A stretch of 64,000 bases of DNA from the IMG/VR virus record IMGVR_UViG_3300032116_000004, positions 124,001 through 188,000 of that record, one strand, 5' to 3'. Positions 1 through 9,432 of this stretch are shown here, in pieces. The stretch's first letter is position 1; every line of letters starts with the position of its first letter. Position numbers and translations under genes: made by a program. The notes under the pieces were generated by a model. It had not been told where the DNA came from, did not search any database, and saw only the letters and a list, made by a program, of their open reading frames with translations.

Positions 1-316
1 CGGTGGTGTGGATATCAGTCCCATTGGAGACTGCATGAAAACTGAAGTGTGGGCCATGGGTCGTGAACTGGGCGTGTTGCAAGATATCATTGATGCCGCT
101 CCCACTGATGGTTTATGGGCAGATGGTCGCACTGACGAACAACAGTTAGGCATGACCTACGCCGACCTTGAAGTGGCCATGCGCATGGACCAGGGCGAAA
201 TACAGTGCGATAACAAAGAGCTCAAGAAAAATCTAAAACGATATCGAGAGATCCGTGCTCGCAATCTACACAAGATGCAGGCTATTCCGGTGTGTAAATT
301 CAAAGATCAAGAATGA
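1..316 (+). CDS. nadE: NH3-dependent NAD+ synthetase, C-terminal part (5'-truncated by window)
   Basis: DISPIGDCMKTEVWAMGRELG...PTDGLWADGRTDEQQLGMTY matches the NadE C-terminal motifs. Confidence 0.85.
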   Translation, partial: GGVDISPIGDCMKTEVWAMGRELGVLQDIIDAAPTDGLWADGRTDEQQLGMTYADLEVAMRMDQGEIQCDNKELKKNLKRYREIRARNLHKMQAIPVCKFKDQE

Positions 317-1719
317 CGCCTTGGCAGGAATTTTATCTAAGCATAAAAGATTCATCATGGCCGGACTGCGACCATGAACAAGATTTTTTATCTCTACCAC
401 AGTGGATACAGGATGAGTGTCAACAAGTTCATGGTTATGTGATAGGTAGTTACAGAAATCAGCCTCGATATCAACACAAAACATTTCCCATAAAAACTGC
501 CACAGCTTGTCAACTCAAATGGAACTGGAGCACAGTTTATCTTACGACAGAAAATACTGCCAGTTGTCATCGCACCAATCATCACAAGTTTGATATCGAT
601 GTATTTGATTTTCACAACACTCCTAGCAAGTTGGACGATAGATCTCGCATGCTCCAGGGATTTTGGCCCGAAAAAGGTTGTGGTTATTGTCGAGATATAG
701 AAACGGCCGGAGGACAAAGTGACAGGATAACCAATCTTGATATGCCTGGAATGTTTGCTCCGCCAGAACTGGATGATGATCTTGTTGCTATCCAAGTCAC
801 TCCTCGTATATTAGAAGTTTACTTTGACAATGTCTGTAATTTGAAATGTGTGTATTGCGGTCCGCATTTCAGCAGTTTATGGGATGCTGAAAACAAAAAA
901 CATGGTAAGTTTGAAAAAAATGGTTTGATCATCTCGAATACATTTAAGAAAAGTCCTGATATCGCAAAAAATAAAACCAAGATGTTTGAGTGGATATCGC
1001 AACACGGACATAGCCTTACCAACTTTAATTTCCTTGGCGGCGAGCCTTTGTTCCAAAAAGATCTCGATGATTGTCTGGATTTTTTTGATCACAACCCAAT
1101 GCCGGAACTAGAGTTCCAGATTTTTACCAATCTCAATGCTACTCCGGCTCGAGTGTCTGCGGTGGTAAGCAAAATTAAAAATCTCATTGACAAACAACAT
1201 CTCAAAACTTTTGTGGTAACTGCCAGTCTCGATTGCTGGGGACCTGAACAAGAATATGCACGTTTTCCTCTCAAACTAGACATTTGGGAAAAAAATTTCC
1301 GATACCTGCTTGATCAATCTTGGATTAGATTAATAGTAGGTAGCACACTGACTCCTCTCACTATCAAGACTCTGCCTGATCTTATTGAGCGCATCAATCA
1401 ATGGAGAAAGATACGCCATGTATCTCATTACATGAACAGTGCAGAATCACCGTTGCACATGCATGTTGATATTTTAGGCGATGTTTTCGTGGATGATTTT
1501 AATAGAGCTATCCAGATCATGCCCGAGAATGATGCGGAGCAGATCAATATCAAAAAATATCTGCAAGGCATTGCTCAAGAAAGCGCCAGCAAAGGATTTG
1601 ACACAGAGGAAATCATAAAGCTCCGAGAATTTTTAACCGAACTCGATCGGCGTAGAGCAACCAATTGGCAACGAGTTTTTCCTTGGTTAGAGCCTATTTT
1701 TCAGCAGGTTGACCAATAA
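313..1719 (+). CDS. Radical SAM protein with extra Cys-containing N-terminal region
   Basis: CNLKCVYC motif, GGEP motif, additional Cys (C..CHR, CGYC). Confidence 0.85.
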   Translation: MTPWQEFYLSIKDSSWPDCDHEQDFLSLPQWIQDECQQVHGYVIGSYRNQPRYQHKTFPIKTATACQLKWNWSTVYLTTENTASCHRTNHHKFDIDVFDFHNTPSKLDDRSRMLQGFWPEKGCGYCRDIETAGGQSDRITNLDMPGMFAPPELDDDLVAIQVTPRILEVYFDNVCNLKCVYCGPHFSSLWDAENKKHGKFEKNGLIISNTFKKSPDIAKNKTKMFEWISQHGHSLTNFNFLGGEPLFQKDLDDCLDFFDHNPMPELEFQIFTNLNATPARVSAVVSKIKNLIDKQHLKTFVVTASLDCWGPEQEYARFPLKLDIWEKNFRYLLDQSWIRLIVGSTLTPLTIKTLPDLIERINQWRKIRHVSHYMNSAESPLHMHVDILGDVFVDDFNRAIQIMPENDAEQINIKKYLQGIAQESASKGFDTEEIIKLREFLTELDRRRATNWQRVFPWLEPIFQQVDQ

Positions 1720-2257: not shown

Positions 2258-2472
2258 TCCTATATCCAGCAAGAGTAGAATGGCAAGCCGGAGATACCAT
2301 ACTGAGTTGGGACGGATTCTTGGAGAGCGTGATCGAAGTGTTTGGACTTCCCGGCGATCGTTATGTCACTGAACTGGATGCCAACTACATGGATTTCAAA
2401 TTTTACACCGAGCAGGACCGCATGTTGTTTTTGACAGGTTGGTCAGCCCGCACTTTACCGGAGCAACGATGA
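2254..2472 (+). CDS. Hypothetical protein
   Basis: Coupled ORF in operon. Confidence 0.65.
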   Translation: MILYPARVEWQAGDTILSWDGFLESVIEVFGLPGDRYVTELDANYMDFKFYTEQDRMLFLTGWSARTLPEQR

Positions 2473-2771
2473 TAGAACAAGGACTTTGGGAATACGATCA
2501 AGTGGATGCCGAAGAGCGAGAACAACTAAAAAAGTGGTTGCGTGGCCTGCTACAGGAACGAGTGGTCACTGTGGAATTCGTCAAGGCCGATGGTAGCCCC
2601 AGGCGCATGGAATGCACACTGGCCGAGAGCGCAGGGGCTAAATATTCCACCAATGAAAGCACACGAAAAAAACCTCATCCTGACACCTGCGTGGTCTGGG
2701 ATACCAATCAAAACGCCTGGCGCAGTTTCCGCTGGGATCGTCTAAAACGGATCACATTCAATCTTGGCTAA
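2469..2771 (+). CDS. WYL_2/Sm-like SH3-fold phage protein
   Basis: [19 protein letters not shown]...VWD...WRSFRWD pattern. Confidence 0.65.
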
Positions 2772-2982
2772 AGAAGAAGGCGTAAAAATGGAAGGCACTG
2801 TGGTTGACGTGCTACCCAATGCCATGTTCCGGGTAAAAATAGACGGGCACGAAAATCCTGTGATGGGCATCATTTCGGGCAAGATGCGCATGCACAACAT
2901 CAAGATCCTGCTGGGAGATAGGGTAGAGATGGAGTTCAGTCTCTACGACCTAACCAAAGGGCGCATCACCCGTAGGAGATAA
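2764..2982 (+). CDS. infA: Translation initiation factor IF-1
   Basis: [24 protein letters not shown]...[17 protein letters not shown]...YDLTKGRI. Confidence 0.95.
2878..2982 (+). repeat. Direct repeat copy 1 (3' half of infA)
   Basis: 105 bp near-identical to 4586-4690. Confidence 0.95.
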
Positions 2983-3852
2983 ATGTTGTCTTTCTACATT
3001 GTGCCCAGTTTGGACACACACAATACCAAATTTACTTACGGTGAAGCACCGGAAAGATCCTGGTACTACGAATTTGTGACCGGAAAACAAGATCTCTTGA
3101 TCACTGTGGGAGACAGTTGGACCTGGGGAGATAGTCTGGGTCAGATCGATTTTGACAAAGGAATCTTCGATGATATCACTCACAGGACTTCGCATGTTTT
3201 TGGCAGACTGCTGGCAGACAAACTAAACAGAGACTTTCTCATGTTGGCCAAGTGTGGTGCTACCAATTCGGAAATACACAGAATGGCGTTTGGGTATATC
3301 GATCAGATCAAATCAAAATATCGTAAAATTACTGTGGTAATCACGCTCACAGAATTAATGAGAGAAATCACAGGGGATCCATGGTGGTTAGACCCAGCGC
3401 CAACTGAAAATTCATTGGATGGATTCCTAACAGACTATGAATACAATATGCTGGCAACTTTTCATGCGGCCATGCTTGAGCATCCTGATGTGCAATGGAT
3501 CTTGGCAAGAAACTTTACAGTGTCCTATCCATCAAACATCAGTAAGTTTCCGTATATGCTGAAAAAAACCTGGGTTGATATCTTAGCAGAAGCACAAGAA
3601 GATAAATCATTGTATCCACAGGACGCTAGAATTGTCAGTCAGTTAGGATTTGTTCCGTTGGAAGAATATTTACAAAAACGATCGTTGCATCGGTCCTGGC
3701 GACGAGATTTATATGGTCTCATGAGTTCAGCTTCGCTGGCTATAGATTGGTTGATGGACAGTGATCTAAACTATAAAAAAGCCACCAAACATCCCACTGA
3801 ACGAGGGCATGAATTGTGGGCAGATTATCTATACGATATTGTAAAAGGATGA
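2983..3852 (+). CDS. SGNH/GDSL-hydrolase-like protein
   Basis: ITVGDSWTWG block I, GATN, C-terminal KHPTERGH. Confidence 0.65.
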   Translation: MLSFYIVPSLDTHNTKFTYGEAPERSWYYEFVTGKQDLLITVGDSWTWGDSLGQIDFDKGIFDDITHRTSHVFGRLLADKLNRDFLMLAKCGATNSEIHRMAFGYIDQIKSKYRKITVVITLTELMREITGDPWWLDPAPTENSLDGFLTDYEYNMLATFHAAMLEHPDVQWILARNFTVSYPSNISKFPYMLKKTWVDILAEAQEDKSLYPQDARIVSQLGFVPLEEYLQKRSLHRSWRRDLYGLMSSASLAIDWLMDSDLNYKKATKHPTERGHELWADYLYDIVKG

Positions 3853-3865
3853 TATAAAACTAATC

Positions 3866-4561
3866 ATGAAAAACAAAATTGTGGGGTTCGGGGATAGTTT
3901 CGTATTTGGCAGTGAACTTGATGACAACGACGACGGACATAACTCCTGGATCGGCCTATCGGCAAAAAAACTAGGAGTCACATATGAGACCACTGCTGTT
4001 CCAGGATGCGGTAACGAAAATATCGCTCGACAAATACTGACATATTTTTCTAACAATCCATCAGATGATGTGGTAGCAGTGATCAATTGGACCTGGGGAG
4101 CTCGATGGGATTTTTATGTTCCAGGATTGGAACAATGGACCACGTTGGGTTTAACCTGTGTTCCTAGCAAACTGGCACCAATGGTAGGAATAGAAGAAGC
4201 AGAAAAAATACTGGAATTTTATAACAAATATCCTGGACATTCTACCTTATGGGACAAATGGCGGAGTCTGCAAACAATCTACATGGTGCAAACATTTTTA
4301 AAACATAAAAAAATATCCAATATTCAGACTTACATGGATTATGAACTTTGGGACACTCAATGGCATGCTCCAGACTACATCAGGACCTTGCAAGATTTTA
4401 CTAGGCCTTGCATGCAAAATTTTCAGGGTTTGAATTTCTTGGATTGGAGCAGGTCAAAGGGATTTACAGTCACCGACCCAGGTCTGCACCCCCTAAAAGA
4501 GGCTCATGATGCAGCCTGTGATTTGTGGGTGGATAGTTATGCCCAAGCATTAAAAGACTAA
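3866..4561 (+). CDS. SGNH/GDSL-hydrolase-like protein
   Basis: GFGDSFVFG, PGCGN, INWTW, LHPLKEAH. Confidence 0.65.
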   Translation: MKNKIVGFGDSFVFGSELDDNDDGHNSWIGLSAKKLGVTYETTAVPGCGNENIARQILTYFSNNPSDDVVAVINWTWGARWDFYVPGLEQWTTLGLTCVPSKLAPMVGIEEAEKILEFYNKYPGHSTLWDKWRSLQTIYMVQTFLKHKKISNIQTYMDYELWDTQWHAPDYIRTLQDFTRPCMQNFQGLNFLDWSRSKGFTVTDPGLHPLKEAHDAACDLWVDSYAQALKD

Positions 4562-4585
4562 ATATCTATATGCACATTAGTTTAA

Positions 4586-4690
4586 GGCAAGATGCGCATG
4601 CACAACATCAAGATCCTGCTGGGCGATAGGGTAGAGATGGAGTTCAGCCTCTACGATCTAACCAAAGGTCGCATCACACGCAGGCGCTAA
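4586..4690 (+). pseudogene. Orphan duplicate of infA 3' half (repeat copy 2)
   Basis: Encodes the identical [34 protein letters not shown]; differences only synonymous; no infA 5' half. Confidence 0.85.
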
Positions 4691-4710
4691 ATACCATAAA
4701 GGAATGCTTT

Positions 4711-5142
4711 ATGGGATTCGTAAAAGGCAACGACGGTAAACCCCGTTCTATTAAAAATCCACTGGAAGGCTCGATAGGAGACGCCGATCTCGGTGAGGTC
4801 ACGTTCCAGAGCATAACCATCGGCGGAAATGTTGCCGCCGCAAACATACTCACAAATGGCTATCGATATGCCAACGGTGTTGCAGTGGTATTCGGCGGTG
4901 GTAATGTTACTGCAAATTCAGTGAGTTACTCCCAGACCAATCCAGGAGACTGGCCCACAGTGCTAGCCAATGTGCAGGGCGCACTGGACAGCGTGGCCAA
5001 CACCGTGGCCAACATAGAAACAGGTAGCGGATTTAGTTTTATGGGACCTTACAGTAACGATGCCACAGCCGCCGCAGGCGGAGTGGCCATTGGTCAGGTG
5101 TATTTCAACAACTCTGGTGGGTTGGTAGTGAGGCAAACATGA
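4711..5142 (+). CDS. Probable virion structural protein
   Basis: TAAATA at 4688, AAGGA SD; Gly/Asn/Ala-rich; YSNDATAAAGGVAIGQVY motif. Confidence 0.6.
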   Translation: MGFVKGNDGKPRSIKNPLEGSIGDADLGEVTFQSITIGGNVAAANILTNGYRYANGVAVVFGGGNVTANSVSYSQTNPGDWPTVLANVQGALDSVANTVANIETGSGFSFMGPYSNDATAAAGGVAIGQVYFNNSGGLVVRQT

Positions 5143-5717
5143 TGGAAACAGCCGCCGCAATAGCAGAATTTATCAATCTAGTAGAAGCATCTACTCGTCC
5201 TGCCAAACTGGAAACCACTCCTTTGCCCTACGGGATGAAAGATCTAGATCCGGTGATGAGCGAAAAAACCCTGGATTATCATTTTGAGCATCTGGCCCGT
5301 GGCTACGCCAAACGCTACAACGCAGGTGAAGGCAACGCAGATTTCAATCGTGCTGGCAGTTTCTTGCACAACATGTTCTTCCCGCAGTTTCGTGCTCCCA
5401 AGAGCGGCAATCGCCCTAGAGGATCCAGCCTCAAACTCATCGAGCAAAAGTTTGAAGATTTTGATACATTCAAGGACTCAGTGAAAGAAACCGCCATGAA
5501 GATACAGGGATCGGGATGGGTATATCTATCCACTGCAGGCGAAATCAAGACCATCAAAAATCATGCTGTTCGCACTGACATAGCCTTGCTGATCGACTGG
5601 TGGGAACATGCCTGGGCCCTGGATTACCAAAGTGACAAAGAAGCCTATCTCAACAATGTGTGGCGCATCATCAACTGGGACATCATCAACGAGCGCATTG
5701 GTATCATCGAGGAATAA
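5139..5717 (+). CDS. sod: Fe/Mn superoxide dismutase with short N-terminal leader
   Basis: LPY..L.P.MSEKTLDYH, LHNMFF, GSGW, DWWEHAW ligand motifs. Confidence 0.9.
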   Translation: MMETAAAIAEFINLVEASTRPAKLETTPLPYGMKDLDPVMSEKTLDYHFEHLARGYAKRYNAGEGNADFNRAGSFLHNMFFPQFRAPKSGNRPRGSSLKLIEQKFEDFDTFKDSVKETAMKIQGSGWVYLSTAGEIKTIKNHAVRTDIALLIDWWEHAWALDYQSDKEAYLNNVWRIINWDIINERIGIIEE

Positions 5718-5720
5718 ACT

Positions 5721-6044
5721 ATGCAGTTAACGGAATCAGCACAGAGCAAGATACAAGACATATTCGCCGAGGAAAACAATGCCAATCTCAAACTGCGTGT
5801 GTTCGTGCAGGGCGGTGGTTGCTCGGGCATGCAGTATGGTTTCACATTTGATGAAGCACAAAACGAAGACGACTTTGATTTTGATTACAATGGTGTCAAA
5901 CTCTTGGTAGATTCCATGTCATGGGGCTACCTGCAAGGTGCTACAATAGACTACAAAGACGACATCATGGGCAGTAGTTTCAGCATAGAAAACCCCAACG
6001 CACAGACCACCTGCGGTTGCGGATCAAGTTTCTCACCTTACTAG
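5721..6044 (+). CDS. erpA: Fe-S cluster insertion protein (HesB/IscA/ErpA family)
   Basis: [17 protein letters not shown] ... [14 protein letters not shown]. Confidence 0.9.
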
Positions 6045-6093: not shown

Positions 6094-9000
6094 ATGGCCC
6101 AAGATATTATCAATATTGGCCCACAGCCCAATGACGGGCAGGGTGACAATTTACGCACAGCGTTTGACAAAACCAACGACAATTTCAATCAGATCTGGAC
6201 AGCCGGTCCTGTAGGATCCAATGTCCGTATCGCAGGCAACGTCATCTCCACGCTCCAGGTCAATCAAGATCTAGCCCTGAGCCCCAATGGTGTGGGCAAT
6301 GTGCGCCTCAACAACAACACCATTCCCGGCGCCAACAACACCTGGTTCCTGGGCTCTGCCACCATGCAGTGGCGCGGTTTGTATACGGCGTCGGTAGAAA
6401 CCGGCAACATAACCATCACTGGCACGCTCACAGTGCCCGGCGATGCTGTGATCCAGGGCAATCTCACTGTGGAAGGCGATACCATACAGATTGGCAACAT
6501 CGTCACTGACACCAAGACCATACAGTTGGCCAACACAGCGGCCAATGCCATCCAGGCCAATGGATCGGGCATCACTGTGGGTGCTTCGGACAACATAGCC
6601 ACGTTCCTTTACAATTCCACTTCCAACTCCTGGGTCACCAATCTACCGATCACCTACGCCAACGGTCAACCCATAGGCAAAACGCCTGGCGGCAGCAACA
6701 CCTACATACAGTTCAATGATGCCGGCAACTTTGGCGGCAACGCCAACTTTACCTACAATCGTGCCACAGGCAATTTTTATCTAGGTGGCGCCAATCTCCG
6801 AGCAGTCGCAGGCAACAGCCAACCCTACATCCTTCAGGTGCCCGGAATCGCGTTCCAAGGCGGATCAGCCATCATGGAATGGGACGCAGTAAATCAACAC
6901 GTGGATGTTTCCAACAGTTTTTCTATTTCTGGCACACTGCAATTATACGGCAACTATCCCGGCGATGGAGCGGTAATTACCACAAGCGGCGGGTCTGGGG
7001 TAGACATAACCATTGAACCCTCAGGCAATCTCTATCTCAACGCCGATGGCGGGGAAGTGATTGTTTCTGATCAAACCGCCAGTGTGGATACCAACACAGG
7101 AGCACTCAAAGTCTTGGGTGGCGTTGGAGTAAATGGCAACATCAATGTGGGCGGTAACATCACTGGTGCCAATATCACGGCCAACTATTTCGTTGGCAAT
7201 GGTAGCTTGCTCACCGGCGTGTCCAGTTATGCCAACGCCAATGTGGCAGCCTATGGCGAAGCAGGATGGGCTGGCAATATCATACCCTCGGCCAATGCCA
7301 CTTACAGCCTGGGCAACACCACCACAAGAAGATGGAAAGATATCAATCTTTCCGGTAACATCAACATCGGCGCTGCCAATATCAGCACAGTGCCTGGCAA
7401 TCTACAAACTGCTGTCCTGAGCGTGCCCGGTATCTCTTTCCTGGGTGGCAATGCCATCATGGAATGGGATCCTACCAACCAACACGTTGATATCAGCAAC
7501 AGTTTCAGCGTCAGTGGCACTTTGGCATTGTATGGTAACTATCCTGGCACCGGAGCACTGATCGCTACATCAGGCGGTTCTGGTGTAGACATCAAGATAG
7601 AACCCTCAGGCAACTTGTATCTCAACGCCGACGGTGGCGAAGTCATAGTATCGGATCAAACTGTCAGTGTGGATCCCAACACAGGAGCTCTCAAGGTCTT
7701 GGGTGGCGTTGGAGTAAATGGCAACATCAATGCGGGTGGCAACATCACCGGCAACTATTTCATTGGCAACGGCAGCCAACTCACAAACTTGCCTAGCACT
7801 GACTGGGCTAATATTGGTAATATCACTAATGCCAATGGACCACAAAATATAGCAATAGGAGAAAATGTTCACCAAACATTTACTTACACACCTGGATTTG
7901 GAACTGTGGCCATCGGATATAATGCAGGTCAAACCAACCAAGGTGGATTAACCGTGGCCGTTGGTTGGCAGGCTGGTCAATCCAATCAAAGTAATAATGC
8001 TATAGCAATTGGATATGCCGCAGGCCAAACTGGGCAAGAAGATGGTGCTGTGGCTATTGGTGCTTTTGCTGGTGCTCAACTCCAGGGTGCCGATGCCATA
8101 GCAATTGGTAAGTACGCTGGTTATAATGGAGTTGGTGTAGCACAACCTGATAACACCATCTTCCTAAATGCCACAGGCACAAATATGGGAGGCGTGCCCG
8201 CACAAACAAATAGTTTCTATGTAGCACCCATACGCAATGATGTGGCCAATGTGGCTGAGGTCATGTTCTACAACACTACCAGCAAGGAAATTACCTATGG
8301 CAATGTCATAAGTGTTGCTGGTAACATCACAGGCGGCAACGTCAACACTGGCAAGATCACACTCACCAACGGTGCAGTGATACGAGACACCGCAGGTGAT
8401 GCAGTGGCCATTGGACAACAAGCTGGTGAAACATCACAAGGCAACTATGCAGTGGCCATGGGCTTCCAAGCTGCCATAACCTCACAAGGCATTGGAGCAG
8501 TGGCCATTGGTCGAGAAGCCGGCAACGCACAAGGTGCCTACGCAGTGGCCATTGGTCAAGAAGCTGGGTTTGCCGGGCAGAGCAGTGGTGCAATAGCCAT
8601 AGGTTTAGAGGCTGGCAACAATAATCAAGGCGGCGATTCAGTGGCCATTGGTTACCGTGCCGGAGGGGAAGACCAAGACATCTATGCAGTGGCTATAGGT
8701 TATCAAGCTGGTAACAATACCCAAGGTGGTTCAGCAGTGGCCATTGGTGAAATGGCTGGTACCGACACACAAGGCGTCTCAGCAGTGGCCGTAGGTGACG
8801 GAGCTGGTCGAATCACACAAGGCGAATATGCGGTAGCCTTGGGCTACGGTGCTGGTGACACCAATCAAGGCAACAATTCAATCATCATCAATGCCACCGG
8901 TGGCATACTTAATCAAACCACTGCCAATACATTCACAGTGGCACCCATACGCAATGATGTGGCCAATGTGGCTGAAGTCGTGTTCTATAATACCACATCA

Positions 9001-9432
9001 AAAGAAATCACCTATGGTAATGCTATCAGTGTAACTGGTAACATCTCAGGTGGAAACATTATCACCGCAGGCAACATCACCGGCAACACAGCCGGCTTTG
9101 CCCTAGGTTATAGAGACATACCGCAGGTCGCATTCACAGCTAACGCAACCATTGCTACCACAGACGCTGGCAAGCACTTCTACTCCACCCAAAGCACCGA
9201 CTACATCCTCACAATAGCCAACAACGCCAGCCAAGGGTTTGCGACAGGTGCAGCCATCACAGTGATCAATCAAGGCACAGGCAATATCACAGTGGCCCAA
9301 GGATCTGGAGTAACTCTTTACCTGGCTGGTAATGCCACATCAGGCAACAGGACAGTGGCCACATTTGGTATGGCCACAATCATGAAGGTGGCCACAGACA
9401 CCTGGTTCATCAACGGCACCGGAGTCAGCTAA
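6094..9432 (+). CDS. Tail fibre / adhesin-like virion protein
   Basis: N-terminal INIGPQPNDGQGDNLRTAFDKTNDNF (T4 gp9/10-like anchor), GNITG repeats, YadA-head-like AVAIGxxAG repeats. Confidence 0.8.
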   Translation: MAQDIINIGPQPNDGQGDNLRTAFDKTNDNFNQIWTAGPVGSNVRIAGNVISTLQVNQDLALSPNGVGNVRLNNNTIPGANNTWFLGSATMQWRGLYTASVETGNITITGTLTVPGDAVIQGNLTVEGDTIQIGNIVTDTKTIQLANTAANAIQANGSGITVGASDNIATFLYNSTSNSWVTNLPITYANGQPIGKTPGGSNTYIQFNDAGNFGGNANFTYNRATGNFYLGGANLRAVAGNSQPYILQVPGIAFQGGSAIMEWDAVNQHVDVSNSFSISGTLQLYGNYPGDGAVITTSGGSGVDITIEPSGNLYLNADGGEVIVSDQTASVDTNTGALKVLGGVGVNGNINVGGNITGANITANYFVGNGSLLTGVSSYANANVAAYGEAGWAGNIIPSANATYSLGNTTTRRWKDINLSGNINIGAANISTVPGNLQTAVLSVPGISFLGGNAIMEWDPTNQHVDISNSFSVSGTLALYGNYPGTGALIATSGGSGVDIKIEPSGNLYLNADGGEVIVSDQTVSVDPNTGALKVLGGVGVNGNINAGGNITGNYFIGNGSQLTNLPSTDWANIGNITNANGPQNIAIGENVHQTFTYTPGFGTVAIGYNAGQTNQGGLTVAVGWQAGQSNQSNNAIAIGYAAGQTGQEDGAVAIGAFAGAQLQGADAIAIGKYAGYNGVGVAQPDNTIFLNATGTNMGGVPAQTNSFYVAPIRNDVANVAEVMFYNTTSKEITYGNVISVAGNITGGNVNTGKITLTNGAVIRDTAGDAVAIGQQAGETSQGNYAVAMGFQAAITSQGIGAVAIGREAGNAQGAYAVAIGQEAGFAGQSSGAIAIGLEAGNNNQGGDSVAIGYRAGGEDQDIYAVAIGYQAGNNTQGGSAVAIGEMAGTDTQGVSAVAVGDGAGRITQGEYAVALGYGAGDTNQGNNSIIINATGGILNQTTANTFTVAPIRNDVANVAEVVFYNTTSKEITYGNAISVTGNISGGNIITAGNITGNTAGFALGYRDIPQVAFTANATIATTDAGKHFYSTQSTDYILTIANNASQGFATGAAITVINQGTGNITVAQGSGVTLYLAGNATSGNRTVATFGMATIMKVATDTWFINGTGVS
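6838..7751 (+). repeat. Intragenic duplication (~330 bp units at 6838-7166 and 7423-7751)
   Basis: VPGI.F.GG.AIMEWD...GNIN.GGNITG occurs twice, 585 bp apart. Confidence 0.9.
8221..9022 (+). repeat. Intragenic repeat pair (8221-8305, 8938-9022), each closing a YadA-like repeat block
   Basis: VAPIRNDVANVAEV.FYNTTSKEITYGN twice. Confidence 0.85.

What the first reader, a model, noticed from the sequence alone, without database searches (positions are those of the whole stretch)
2878..4690. Two-gene insert bracketed by a synonymously diverged duplication of the infA 3' half
Seen: 2878-2982 and 4586-4690 encode the same 34 aa; the first 38 bp are identical, then 7 codons differ, all synonymously. 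Between them are two AT-richer SGNH-like genes and a dangling TAAATA+ATG stub (4559-4572). Inference: a segment from a related phage entered by crossover inside infA, supplying a replacement 3' end, with no integrase nearby. Recombination between the copies would excise the insert and leave infA intact, so it may be a reversible cassette.
Basis: partly seen in the sequence, partly recalled or inferred. Interest (0 to 1): 0.7.

Follow-up and report, generated by a model that had tools for sequence, protein, structure and literature searches.

The report
Two phage gene cassettes stacked by misjoin
In a freshwater jumbo phage, two alternative accessory-gene cassettes that normally compete for one slot between the infA and SOD genes sit in tandem, joined by a scar made of the first 8 codons of a foreign SOD gene fused to the last 34 codons of infA; it is a clear footprint of ordinary illegitimate recombination, not a new mobile element.

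Summary
Positions 2878-2984 and 4586-4692 are a 107-nt direct repeat with 8 mismatches. All 8 are silent, and the first 38 nt are identical. Two SGNH-fold hydrolase genes (gA, gB) lie between the copies.

The "dangling TAAATA+ATG stub" (4559-4593) is the 5' end of a SOD gene. In relatives, gB is followed by TAAATA, 5 nt, then the SOD start (MHHTIRQD...); the stub reads MHISLRQD. It joins infA codon 31 inside a shared CAAGAT/GGCAAGAT microhomology.

Related phages keep a conserved block, WYL2-infA-[slot]-SOD-IscA. The slot is empty, or holds p143, gB, gA+gB or others. Both parental forms exist:
- infA-gA-gB-SOD in L075
- infA-p143-SOD in L074 and L007

The window is these two forms stacked. Compared with the nearest strains, where infA runs straight into SOD, the extra DNA is about 2973-5141, so it includes copy 2 and p143.

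The arrangement is real. It is 100% identical in at least 24 contigs from many samples, including k=141 assemblies. The genome has no integrase, resolvase or HNH_3 gene.

Excision or reversibility could not be tested: only k=31 contigs were available, and one low-coverage hybrid contig is ambiguous.

This is an instructive example of a known process.

The parts
2469..2771 (+). WYL_2-domain gene, the conserved left neighbour of infA
   Evidence: PF10902 3.5e-14. It lies upstream of infA in most relatives.
2788..2982 (+). infA, intact translation initiation factor IF-1 (64 aa; alternative TTG start at 2764 gives 72 aa)
   Evidence: PF01176 1.9e-19. The exact protein is listed in 76 collection blocks, including strains whose infA DNA differs by 6-8%.
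2878..2984 (+). Repeat copy 1: the 3' 34 codons plus stop of the working infA gene. Its last codons, AGG AGA TAA, are of the type seen when infA is followed by a gA, gB or rSAM cassette.
   Evidence: Terminal-codon linkage.
2983..3852 (+). gA, a 289-aa SGNH/GDSL-fold hydrolase (invariant G43-D44-S45, H270)
   Evidence: AF2 model pLDDT 94.7. Foldseek PDB hits are CE2 esterases, AOAH and GDSL lipases, probability 1.0. Homologues carry PF00657 or PF19547. Alignment A3.
3866..4561 (+). gB, a 231-aa SGNH/GDSL-fold hydrolase (invariant G9-D10-S11, H208). It is the commonest occupant of the infA|SOD slot in relatives.
   Evidence: AF2 model pLDDT 84.8. Foldseek hits TesA and GDSL esterases, target TM 0.6-0.7. 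470 homologues. Slot census.
4559..4564 (+). TAAATA motif overlapping the gB stop codon. In relatives the same motif lies 5 nt before the SOD start codon.
   Evidence: TAAATA-N3-8-ATG occurs 27 times on the + strand of the genome against 8.9 +/- 3.1 expected.
4570..4593 (+). Stub: the first 8 codons (MHISLRQD) of a donor SOD gene. As an ORF it runs out of frame into copy 2 and ends at 4629 (19 aa).
   Evidence: Aligns with gB-stop/TAAATA/SOD-start of L047, L044 and L048 (MHHTIRQD). It differs from the resident SOD start, MMETAAAIAEF.
4586..4593 (.). Recombination joint. GGCAAGAT is shared by the donor SOD codons 6-8 (R-Q-D; CAAGAT is seen in relatives) and infA codons 31-33.
   Evidence: Alignment A2. 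Sequence read directly.
4586..4692 (+). Repeat copy 2: a displaced 3' remnant of a second infA allele (34 codons plus stop, ending CGC TAAATA, as in alleles followed by p143 or SOD). Gene callers report a 30-aa ORF at 4598-4690.
   Evidence: The downstream spacer is homologous to the infA-p143 spacer of L007 and L074.
4711..5142 (+). p143, a 143-aa phage protein of unknown function. It forms the second slot cassette; its stop overlaps the SOD start.
   Evidence: Found as infA-p143-SOD in L007 (80% aa) and L074 (85% aa). No family found.
5139..5717 (+). Resident Fe/Mn superoxide dismutase gene, the right border of the slot
   Evidence: PF02777 1.3e-22. Homology with the empty-slot strains resumes exactly at 5142.
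5721..6044 (+). IscA/HesB-type Fe-S assembly gene, part of the conserved right flank
   Evidence: PF01521 8.1e-20. Syntenic in relatives.

Best explanation
The interval between infA and the SOD gene is a hypervariable slot in this family of freshwater jumbo phages. Some relatives carry gA-gB there (infA-gA-gB-SOD) and others carry p143 (infA-p143-SOD). In the window's lineage, one illegitimate, out-of-register recombination between two such genomes, presumably during co-infection, joined codon 8 of the SOD gene downstream of gA-gB to codon 31 of the infA gene upstream of p143. The joint used the short shared sequence (GG)CAAGAT.

The product keeps a complete infA, both cassettes and a complete SOD. 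It also carries a non-functional scar: SOD' (8 codons) fused out of frame to 'infA (34 codons). The two infA 3' halves differ only at silent sites because each evolved as part of a working infA allele before the event. The event is recent enough that the remnant has not decayed.

Shown: the anatomy, both parental arrangements in relatives, the reality of the structure, and the absence of site-specific recombinases.

Inferred: the co-infection, the exact donor sequence at the joint, and that the general recombination or replication machinery made the joint.
For: 1. Stub identity. Positions 4559-4593 align with gB-stop + TAAATA + 5 nt + ATG + SOD codons 2-8 of relatives. MHISLRQD matches MHHTIRQD in 5 of 8 residues, with 2 more conservative. 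The match ends at CAAGAT, exactly where infA sequence (GGCAAGATGCGC) begins.
2. Both parental arrangements exist: infA-gA-gB-TAAATA-SOD in L075-L077, and infA-p143-SOD in L074 and L007 with a homologous infA-p143 spacer.
3. Slot census. Among 27 distinct infA->SOD intervals, about 10 are empty and the rest hold p143, gB, gA+gB in either order, rSAM-like+gB or others. Only the window lineage is stacked.
4. Nearest strains. L063-L066 have an identical infA protein and 92-94% nt identity in the flanks. In them infA runs directly into SOD. Homology to the window stops at about 2972-2984 and resumes at 5142.
5. The 8 differences between the copies are all silent (0 of 200,000 random trials). infA alleles of other strains show the same kind of silent polymorphism.
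6. The last infA codon is AGA in alleles followed by gA, gB or rSAM cassettes (as in copy 1) and CGN+TAAATA in alleles followed by SOD or p143 (as in copy 2).
7. The structure is real. It is 100% identical in two other IMG/VR contigs and in an ENA MEGAHIT k141 contig of 268 kb (99.99%). All 24 contigs read for the exact p143 protein and all 24 read for the 30-aa remnant ORF carry it. Logan contigs bridge each junction.
8. The genome has no PF00589, PF00239 or PF13392 hit.
Against: - The actual donor, a phage whose SOD starts MHISLRQD, was not found. The microhomology is therefore inferred from relatives at 71% nt identity over the stub.
- The same final structure would result from single-crossover integration of a 1.7-kb circle, so the path is not resolved.
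- All stacked contigs are clonal, so neither decay of nor selection on the scar can be measured.
Confidence: 0.65

Rival explanations
1. Mini-circle route. In a phage with infA-gA-gB-SOD, recombination between the CAAGAT in SOD codon 7-8 and the one in infA codon 32-33 excised a 1,708-bp circle ('infA 3'-gA-gB-SOD'). The circle then integrated by one homologous crossover within the infA 3' half of an infA-p143-SOD phage. The reverse crossover between the two copies would release it again.
For: - It gives exactly the observed structure, including the joint.
- Circles formed by recombination between short flanking repeats have been shown experimentally in T4-type phages (PMC2839356).
- A 160-nt contig in run X20 joins the window's infA 5' half to the copy-2-type 3' half with 0 mismatches. 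That is the predicted empty recipient or the excision product.
- In run X1 the shared 38-mer has depth 13.3 against arms of 8.3-8.4, less than double.
Against: - No circle junction can be told apart from the integrated form in k=31 contigs, because the excised allele has no novel 31-mers.
- The X20 contig has depth 2.75 in a min-abundance-2 de Bruijn graph and may be an artefact.
- In X12 the arm depths (5.6, 7.06, 5.4; shared 12) leave no room for an insert-free allele.
- 0 of 24 long contigs show infA-p143 without gA-gB.
- It needs two events where one is enough.
Confidence: 0.2
2. A site-specific integrative element that targets infA, carries a replacement 3' end and uses the 38-bp identical block as its att core.
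For: A direct repeat of a gene's 3' end flanking an AT-richer insert, with the target gene left intact, is the classic signature of such elements (own knowledge). The 38-nt block is perfectly identical.
Against: - No tyrosine or serine recombinase in the whole 315.8-kb genome, and none in the insert.
- The right end is a fused SOD gene fragment, not an att arm.
- The 38-nt block is invariant among ordinary infA alleles anyway.
- gA and gB occupy the same slot in relatives without any repeat.
Confidence: 0.03
3. Assembly chimera of two co-occurring strains joined through the shared 38-mer.
For: Strains with different slot contents co-occur in the same kinds of sample. k=31 graphs do branch at the repeat.
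Against: - The stub-'infA joint is a unique sequence present in many runs (X12 contig 4480-4615; X13 contig 3290-6004).
- Assemblies with k=141, longer than the whole 107-nt repeat, and JGI assemblies give the same order at 99.99-100% identity in at least 24 contigs.
Confidence: 0.02
4. In-situ duplication of the infA 3' half followed by divergence, or a remnant kept because it is functional (a 30-32-aa peptide or a regulatory leader for p143).
For: The remnant keeps an ATG (4592 or 4598) with AAGG upstream and an open frame. It also carries the native upstream region of p143.
Against: - In-situ divergence of an untranslated copy would not be purely silent.
- It cannot explain the SOD stub or the gA-gB content.
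- All carriers are clonal, so there is no sign of selection.
Confidence: 0.05

Closest known systems
Hyperplastic-region cassette shuffling in T4-type phages (PeSL cassettes and mini-circles; Arbiol et al. 2010, PMC2839356; Comeau et al. 2014, PMC4122927)
   Same: - Accessory ORFs come and go at a fixed position between conserved genes.
- No dedicated recombinase is involved.
- Short direct repeats at the borders could, in principle, release and re-insert a small circle.
   Different: - The borders here are not promoter-stem-loop cassettes. No sigma-70-like promoters or terminators occur beyond chance.
- The repeat is a 105-nt coding fragment of infA.
- One border is an out-of-frame fusion of two gene fragments.
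- Circles were not demonstrated.
Illegitimate-recombination model of phage genome mosaicism (discussed in Martinsohn et al. 2008, PMC2327257)
   Same: A novel joint between non-homologous sequences of two related co-infecting genomes, with only a few bases of identity at the joint. The recombinant survives because no essential gene was damaged.
   Different: Most described mosaic joints lie at gene borders and leave no debris. Here the raw joint lies inside two genes and both truncated pieces are still present, so the breakpoints can be read to within 8 nt.
Integrative elements that insert into the 3' end of a gene and supply a replacement end (tRNA/tmRNA-targeting islands and prophages; own knowledge)
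   Same: The target gene stays intact. A displaced 3' fragment remains on the far side of the insert, and the insert is AT-richer.
   Different: - No integrase.
- The host is itself a lytic-type jumbo phage.
- The far border is a SOD fragment, not an att site.
Unequal crossing-over that stacks alleles in tandem (general genetics; own knowledge)
   Same: Two alternative occupants of one locus end up side by side with a duplicated flank, and homologous recombination can later collapse them.
   Different: The misalignment was not guided by a repeat but by 6-8 nt of chance identity.

Membership tests
Illegitimate (microhomology) recombination joint between related phage genomes | The joint connects sequences that are not homologous to each other | tested here: met
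   SOD codons 1-8 are joined to infA codons 31-64, out of frame.
Illegitimate (microhomology) recombination joint between related phage genomes | A few bases of identity at the breakpoint | tested here: inconclusive
   CAAGAT is present in the SOD of L047 and L044 and in infA, and GGCAAGAT is possible. The true donor was not found, so this is inferred.
Illegitimate (microhomology) recombination joint between related phage genomes | Unrearranged parental arrangements exist | tested here: met
   infA-gA-gB-SOD in L075-L077. infA-p143-SOD in L074 and L007.
Site-specific integrative element | Encodes, or sits beside, a tyrosine or serine recombinase | tested here: not met
   PF00589 and PF00239 have no match in the whole genome, while the control genomes are positive.
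Site-specific integrative element | Both ends are att sites sharing a core | tested here: not met
   The right end is a SOD gene fragment fused to infA. The identical 38 nt are invariant in ordinary alleles.
PeSL-type mobile regulatory cassette (T4-type phages) | Flanked by repeated early-promoter plus stem-loop terminator motifs | tested here: not met
   3 promoter-like sites against 7.0 expected, and 4 terminator-like sites against 3.1 expected, none at the borders. Only a TAAATA motif recurs.
PeSL-type mobile regulatory cassette (T4-type phages) | Extrachromosomal mini-circles detectable | not testable with these tools
   All runs are held as k=31 contigs. The shared run is 38 nt, so neither circle nor excised allele has diagnostic 31-mers.
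Homing-endonuclease-driven insertion | An HNH, GIY-YIG or LAGLIDADG gene in or next to the insert | tested here: not met
   No PF13392 hit. The only GIY-YIG match is sub-threshold and about 80 kb away. A relative (L063) does carry HNH_3 between SOD and IscA.
SGNH/GDSL hydrolases (gA, gB) | SGNH alpha/beta/alpha fold | tested here: met
   Foldseek PDB: 73 hits for gA and 58 for gB at E<=1e-3, the top-ranked ones nearly all GDSL/SGNH enzymes at probability about 1.0.
SGNH/GDSL hydrolases (gA, gB) | Block I GDS nucleophile and block V catalytic His conserved | tested here: met
   Invariant in gA: G43 D44 S45, H270. Invariant in gB: G9 D10 S11, H208. The Asp of the DxxH motif is not at the canonical -3 position in either.
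SGNH/GDSL hydrolases (gA, gB) | Esterase or lipase activity and substrate | not testable with these tools
   Needs expression and assay.
Translation initiation factor IF-1 (infA) | Full-length S1-like OB domain scoring above the Pfam cut-off | tested here: met
   PF01176, 69.5 bits against a cut-off of 30.2, profile positions 2-64 of 64.

The most novel reading that the evidence does not exclude
The scar is the junction of a 1.7-kb mini-circle ('infA 3'-gA-gB-SOD') that moved gA-gB from one jumbo phage into another by a single crossover in infA. The two copies keep it excisable. This would be a natural footprint of recombinase-free circle-mediated gene transfer between phages, extending the PeSL mini-circle idea to coding-sequence repeats and to jumbo phages. 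The hybrid contig in run X20 would then be the empty or excised allele.
Probability: 0.2. Interest if true: 0.6.

Novelty: new member of a known kind. Interest (0 to 1): 0.35.

Why it matters
Mosaic phage genomes are thought to arise largely from rare illegitimate joints between co-infecting relatives. Those joints are usually seen only after selection has tidied them to gene borders. Here the raw joint survives with both truncated gene pieces, and both parental arrangements and empty-slot strains are available from metagenomes. The event can therefore be reconstructed to within 8 nt.

The locus also shows how a phage can gain rather than swap accessory genes at a hot slot. It marks infA|SOD as a hypervariable locus in a widespread group of freshwater jumbo phages. 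It does not reveal a new mechanism or a new kind of mobile element.

Tried and rejected
- INPHARED phage records hold no relative of the region.
- Pfam and PHROGs give nothing for gA, gB or p143. gA and gB are not detectable paralogues by BLASTP.
- The Atlas search gives p143 only anonymous viral clusters.
- An exact-pattern search for an intact donor SOD beginning with the stub sequence found nothing in IMG/VR.
- The promoter and terminator scan shows nothing at the borders.
- Read evidence for excision or circles: all 20 runs are held only as Logan k=31 contigs. The identical run is 38 nt, so an excised allele or a circle has no diagnostic k-mer. No joints were reported. The X20 hybrid contig and the X1 depth ratio hint at an insert-free allele, and the X12 depths do not. 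I treat this as unresolved, not as support.
- I first read the 38-bp identity as a crossover or gene-conversion tract. I rejected this because the same stretch is invariant among independent infA alleles.
- I considered a homing endonuclease because L063 has HNH_3 beside SOD. None is present in this genome.
Full report
**Where the window lies.** The window is bases 124001-188000 of a 315,778-bp IMG/VR jumbo-phage contig (CheckV 91% complete, GC 47%) from a freshwater metagenome.

**The observation.**
- infA (2788-2982, or 2764 with the TTG start) is a full-length IF-1 gene (PF01176, 1.9e-19).
- Its last 34 codons plus stop are repeated at 4586-4690. The aligned repeat is 107 nt with 8 mismatches.
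- The mismatches fall in 7 codons and all are silent. Only 21.6% of single changes in this stretch are silent, and 0 of 200,000 random placements of 8 changes left the peptide unchanged.
- The first 38 nt are identical.

**The genes between the copies.** Two genes, gA (2983-3852) and gB (3866-4561), lie between the copies. Pfam and PHROGs do not recognise them. AlphaFold models from family alignments are confident (pLDDT 94.7 and 84.8). Foldseek places both in the SGNH/GDSL hydrolase fold, alongside CE2 acetyl-esterases, acyloxyacyl hydrolase and TesA. The GDS nucleophile motif and the catalytic His are invariant in both. Some gA homologues carry PF00657.

**What the stub is.**
- In a dozen relatives, gB ends in ...TAA ATA, and 5 nt later comes the ATG of the SOD gene.
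- The window has the same gB-stop/TAAATA/N5/ATG. It is followed by CAC ATT AGT TTA AGG CAA GAT (MHISLRQD). This aligns codon for codon with the SOD start of L047, L044 and L048 (MHHTIRQD...).
- The similarity ends at CAAGAT. From there the sequence is infA (GGC AAG ATG CGC...).
- The stub is therefore the first 8 codons of a SOD gene, of a different N-terminal type from the resident SOD (MMETAAAIAEF). It is fused out of frame to infA codon 31.
- The two partners share CAAGAT, and possibly GGCAAGAT, at the joint.

**The slot in relatives.** Sixty-odd loci from IMG/VR, JGI, ENA and Logan share a conserved block: p137-(p72)-WYL_2-infA-[slot]-SOD-IscA-tail fibre. The 27 distinct infA-to-SOD intervals break down as follows:

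| Slot content | Loci |
|---|---|
| Empty (about 10 intervals) | L010, L013, L015, L016, L063-L065 and others |
| p143 | L007, L074 |
| gB alone | L047, L053, L078, L079 |
| gA-gB | L075, L076 |
| gB-gA | L071 |
| Radical-SAM-like gene plus gB | L044, L045, L050 (and apparently L048) |
| Unknown gene plus gB | L021, L049 |
| Stacked form | Window lineage and its gA-deletion variant L070 |

Both parental forms therefore exist without any scar:
- infA-gA-gB-TAAATA-SOD (L075)
- infA-p143-SOD, with an infA-p143 spacer clearly homologous to the one after copy 2 (L007, L074)

Each copy's last codon also goes with its downstream neighbour:
- AGA-TAA in alleles followed by gA, gB or rSAM, as in copy 1
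- CGN-TAAATA in alleles followed by SOD or p143, as in copy 2

**Extent of the extra DNA.** The closest strains have an identical infA protein and 92-94% nt identity in the flanks (L063-L066). In them infA is followed directly by SOD. Their homology to the window stops at about 2972-2984 and resumes exactly at the SOD start, 5142. What is extra in the window is therefore gA, gB, the SOD stub, the infA remnant and p143. These are two cassettes, not one.

**Why the copies differ only silently.** infA protein is strictly conserved in this clade while its DNA varies by 6-8% at silent sites. Two independent working alleles therefore differ in just this way. The identical first 38 nt are also invariant among L063, L065 and L066, so they do not mark a crossover.

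**Is it real?**
- The arrangement is 100% identical in two further IMG/VR contigs from other metagenomes.
- It is 99.99% identical in a 268-kb ENA MEGAHIT k141 contig.
- It is present in all 24 contigs read that encode the exact p143, and in all 24 that encode the 30-aa remnant ORF.
- At least 12 public runs from about 10 studies hold >=95% of its 31-mers.
- Logan contigs bridge gA through SOD (X13, 3290-6004), copy 1 into gA (X16, 2890-3168) and gB/stub into the repeat (X12, 4480-4615).

A strain chimera is excluded.

**Mechanism.** The simplest account is a single out-of-register, microhomology-guided joint between a gA-gB-type genome and a p143-type genome. It kept every intact gene and left the SOD'/'infA scar.
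- No tyrosine or serine recombinase and no HNH_3 gene occurs anywhere in the genome. The only GIY-YIG match is sub-threshold and 80 kb away.
- The general recombination or replication machinery is therefore the inferred agent.
- All stacked contigs are clonal. The event is thus recent compared with the 6-8% divergence between strains.

**Alternative route.** The same structure would arise if a 1,708-bp circle ('infA-gA-gB-SOD') formed in the donor at the two CAAGAT sites and then integrated by one crossover in infA. Such circles are documented for T4-type phages (PMC2839356). I cannot separate the two routes.

**Reversibility.** Recombination between the copies would indeed restore infA-p143. 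The available runs are k=31 contigs and the identical run is 38 nt, so neither an excised allele nor a circle has a diagnostic k-mer.
- One 160-nt X20 contig (depth 2.75) joins the infA 5' half to the copy-2-type 3' half with no mismatch. It could be the insert-free allele or a low-coverage graph artefact.
- X1 depths hint at an insert-free allele (shared 38-mer 13.3 against arms of 8.3-8.4). X12 depths do not (12 against 5.6 + 7.06).
- No long contig shows the insert-free p143 allele.

**Comparison with known systems.** The case fits the illegitimate-recombination model of phage mosaicism (PMC2327257) and the hyperplastic-region cassette turnover of T4-type phages (PMC2839356, PMC4122927).
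- It lacks PeSL-type promoter-terminator borders.
- It mimics the signature of an integrase-borne element that replaces a gene's 3' end, but it fails that family's defining tests.

**Verdict.**
The homologous-crossover mechanism and the extent of the insert are wrong. Reversibility is untested.
- It is a new, unusually legible example of a known process, of moderate interest.

Noticed in passing
window 3340-3492; L070:498-1214: One JGI contig of the same lineage (otherwise 99.9-100% identical) has an in-frame 51-codon deletion in gA. It removes the invariant residues L122, E124 and R127, so gA is probably inactive in that variant. There is only about 4 nt of identity (TGTG) at the breakpoints.
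   Followed up: partly
window 2983-3852 vs L069:2542-3411: A strain whose rSAM and gB genes are 98.8-98.9% identical to the window has a gA that is only 83.2% identical. This looks like an allele swap of gA alone within an almost identical background.
   Followed up: partly
window 313-1719; L063-L066 about 2490-3981: The 468-aa radical-SAM-like gene upstream is replaced by a 108-aa ferredoxin gene (plus a 338-aa ORF in L063) in exactly the strains with an empty infA|SOD slot. In other relatives a distant rSAM-like gene sits inside the slot next to gB. This suggests a possible functional link between the rSAM and SGNH genes.
   Followed up: no
whole genome; window 4559, 4687, 20349, 25993, 30351, 32876, 41925 and others: TAAATA followed 3-8 nt later by ATG occurs 27 times on the + strand (8.9 +/- 3.1 expected) and 11 times on the - strand. 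It often overlaps the previous gene's stop. It precedes SOD in nearly all relatives and resembles the T4 late promoter TATAAATA (own knowledge). If it is a promoter, the transcripts would be nearly leaderless.
   Followed up: partly
L063:5808-6272: An HNH_3 homing-endonuclease-like gene is inserted between SOD and IscA in one close relative. It is absent from the window genome.
   Followed up: partly
window 6094-9432: The tail-fibre gene contains long internal repeats (6838-7214 and 7423-7784 are about 75% identical). Its length differs between otherwise identical contigs (1112, 1066, 1036 and 963 aa; for example, 8591-8724 is missing in L004).
   Followed up: no
window 5139-5180; L047:6687-6780: The SOD genes of this phage group have two unrelated N-terminal leaders (METAAAIAEF... 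and MHHTIRQD.../MDPLPHLREH...) before a shared core starting at VEA(S/T)TRPAKLETTPLPY. The slot's right-hand recombination border therefore lies inside the SOD 5' end.
   Followed up: partly
window 2788-2982 and L063-L066:5001-5195: The phage IF-1 protein is 100% conserved across strains whose infA DNA differs by 6-8%, entirely at silent sites. This indicates strong purifying selection on a phage-encoded translation initiation factor.
   Followed up: partly
runs X3-X11: Nine runs labelled 'fungus metagenome' hold 98-99% of the region's 31-mers, as do the lake-water and freshwater runs. The label is probably a sample-category quirk of the same lake projects.
   Followed up: no
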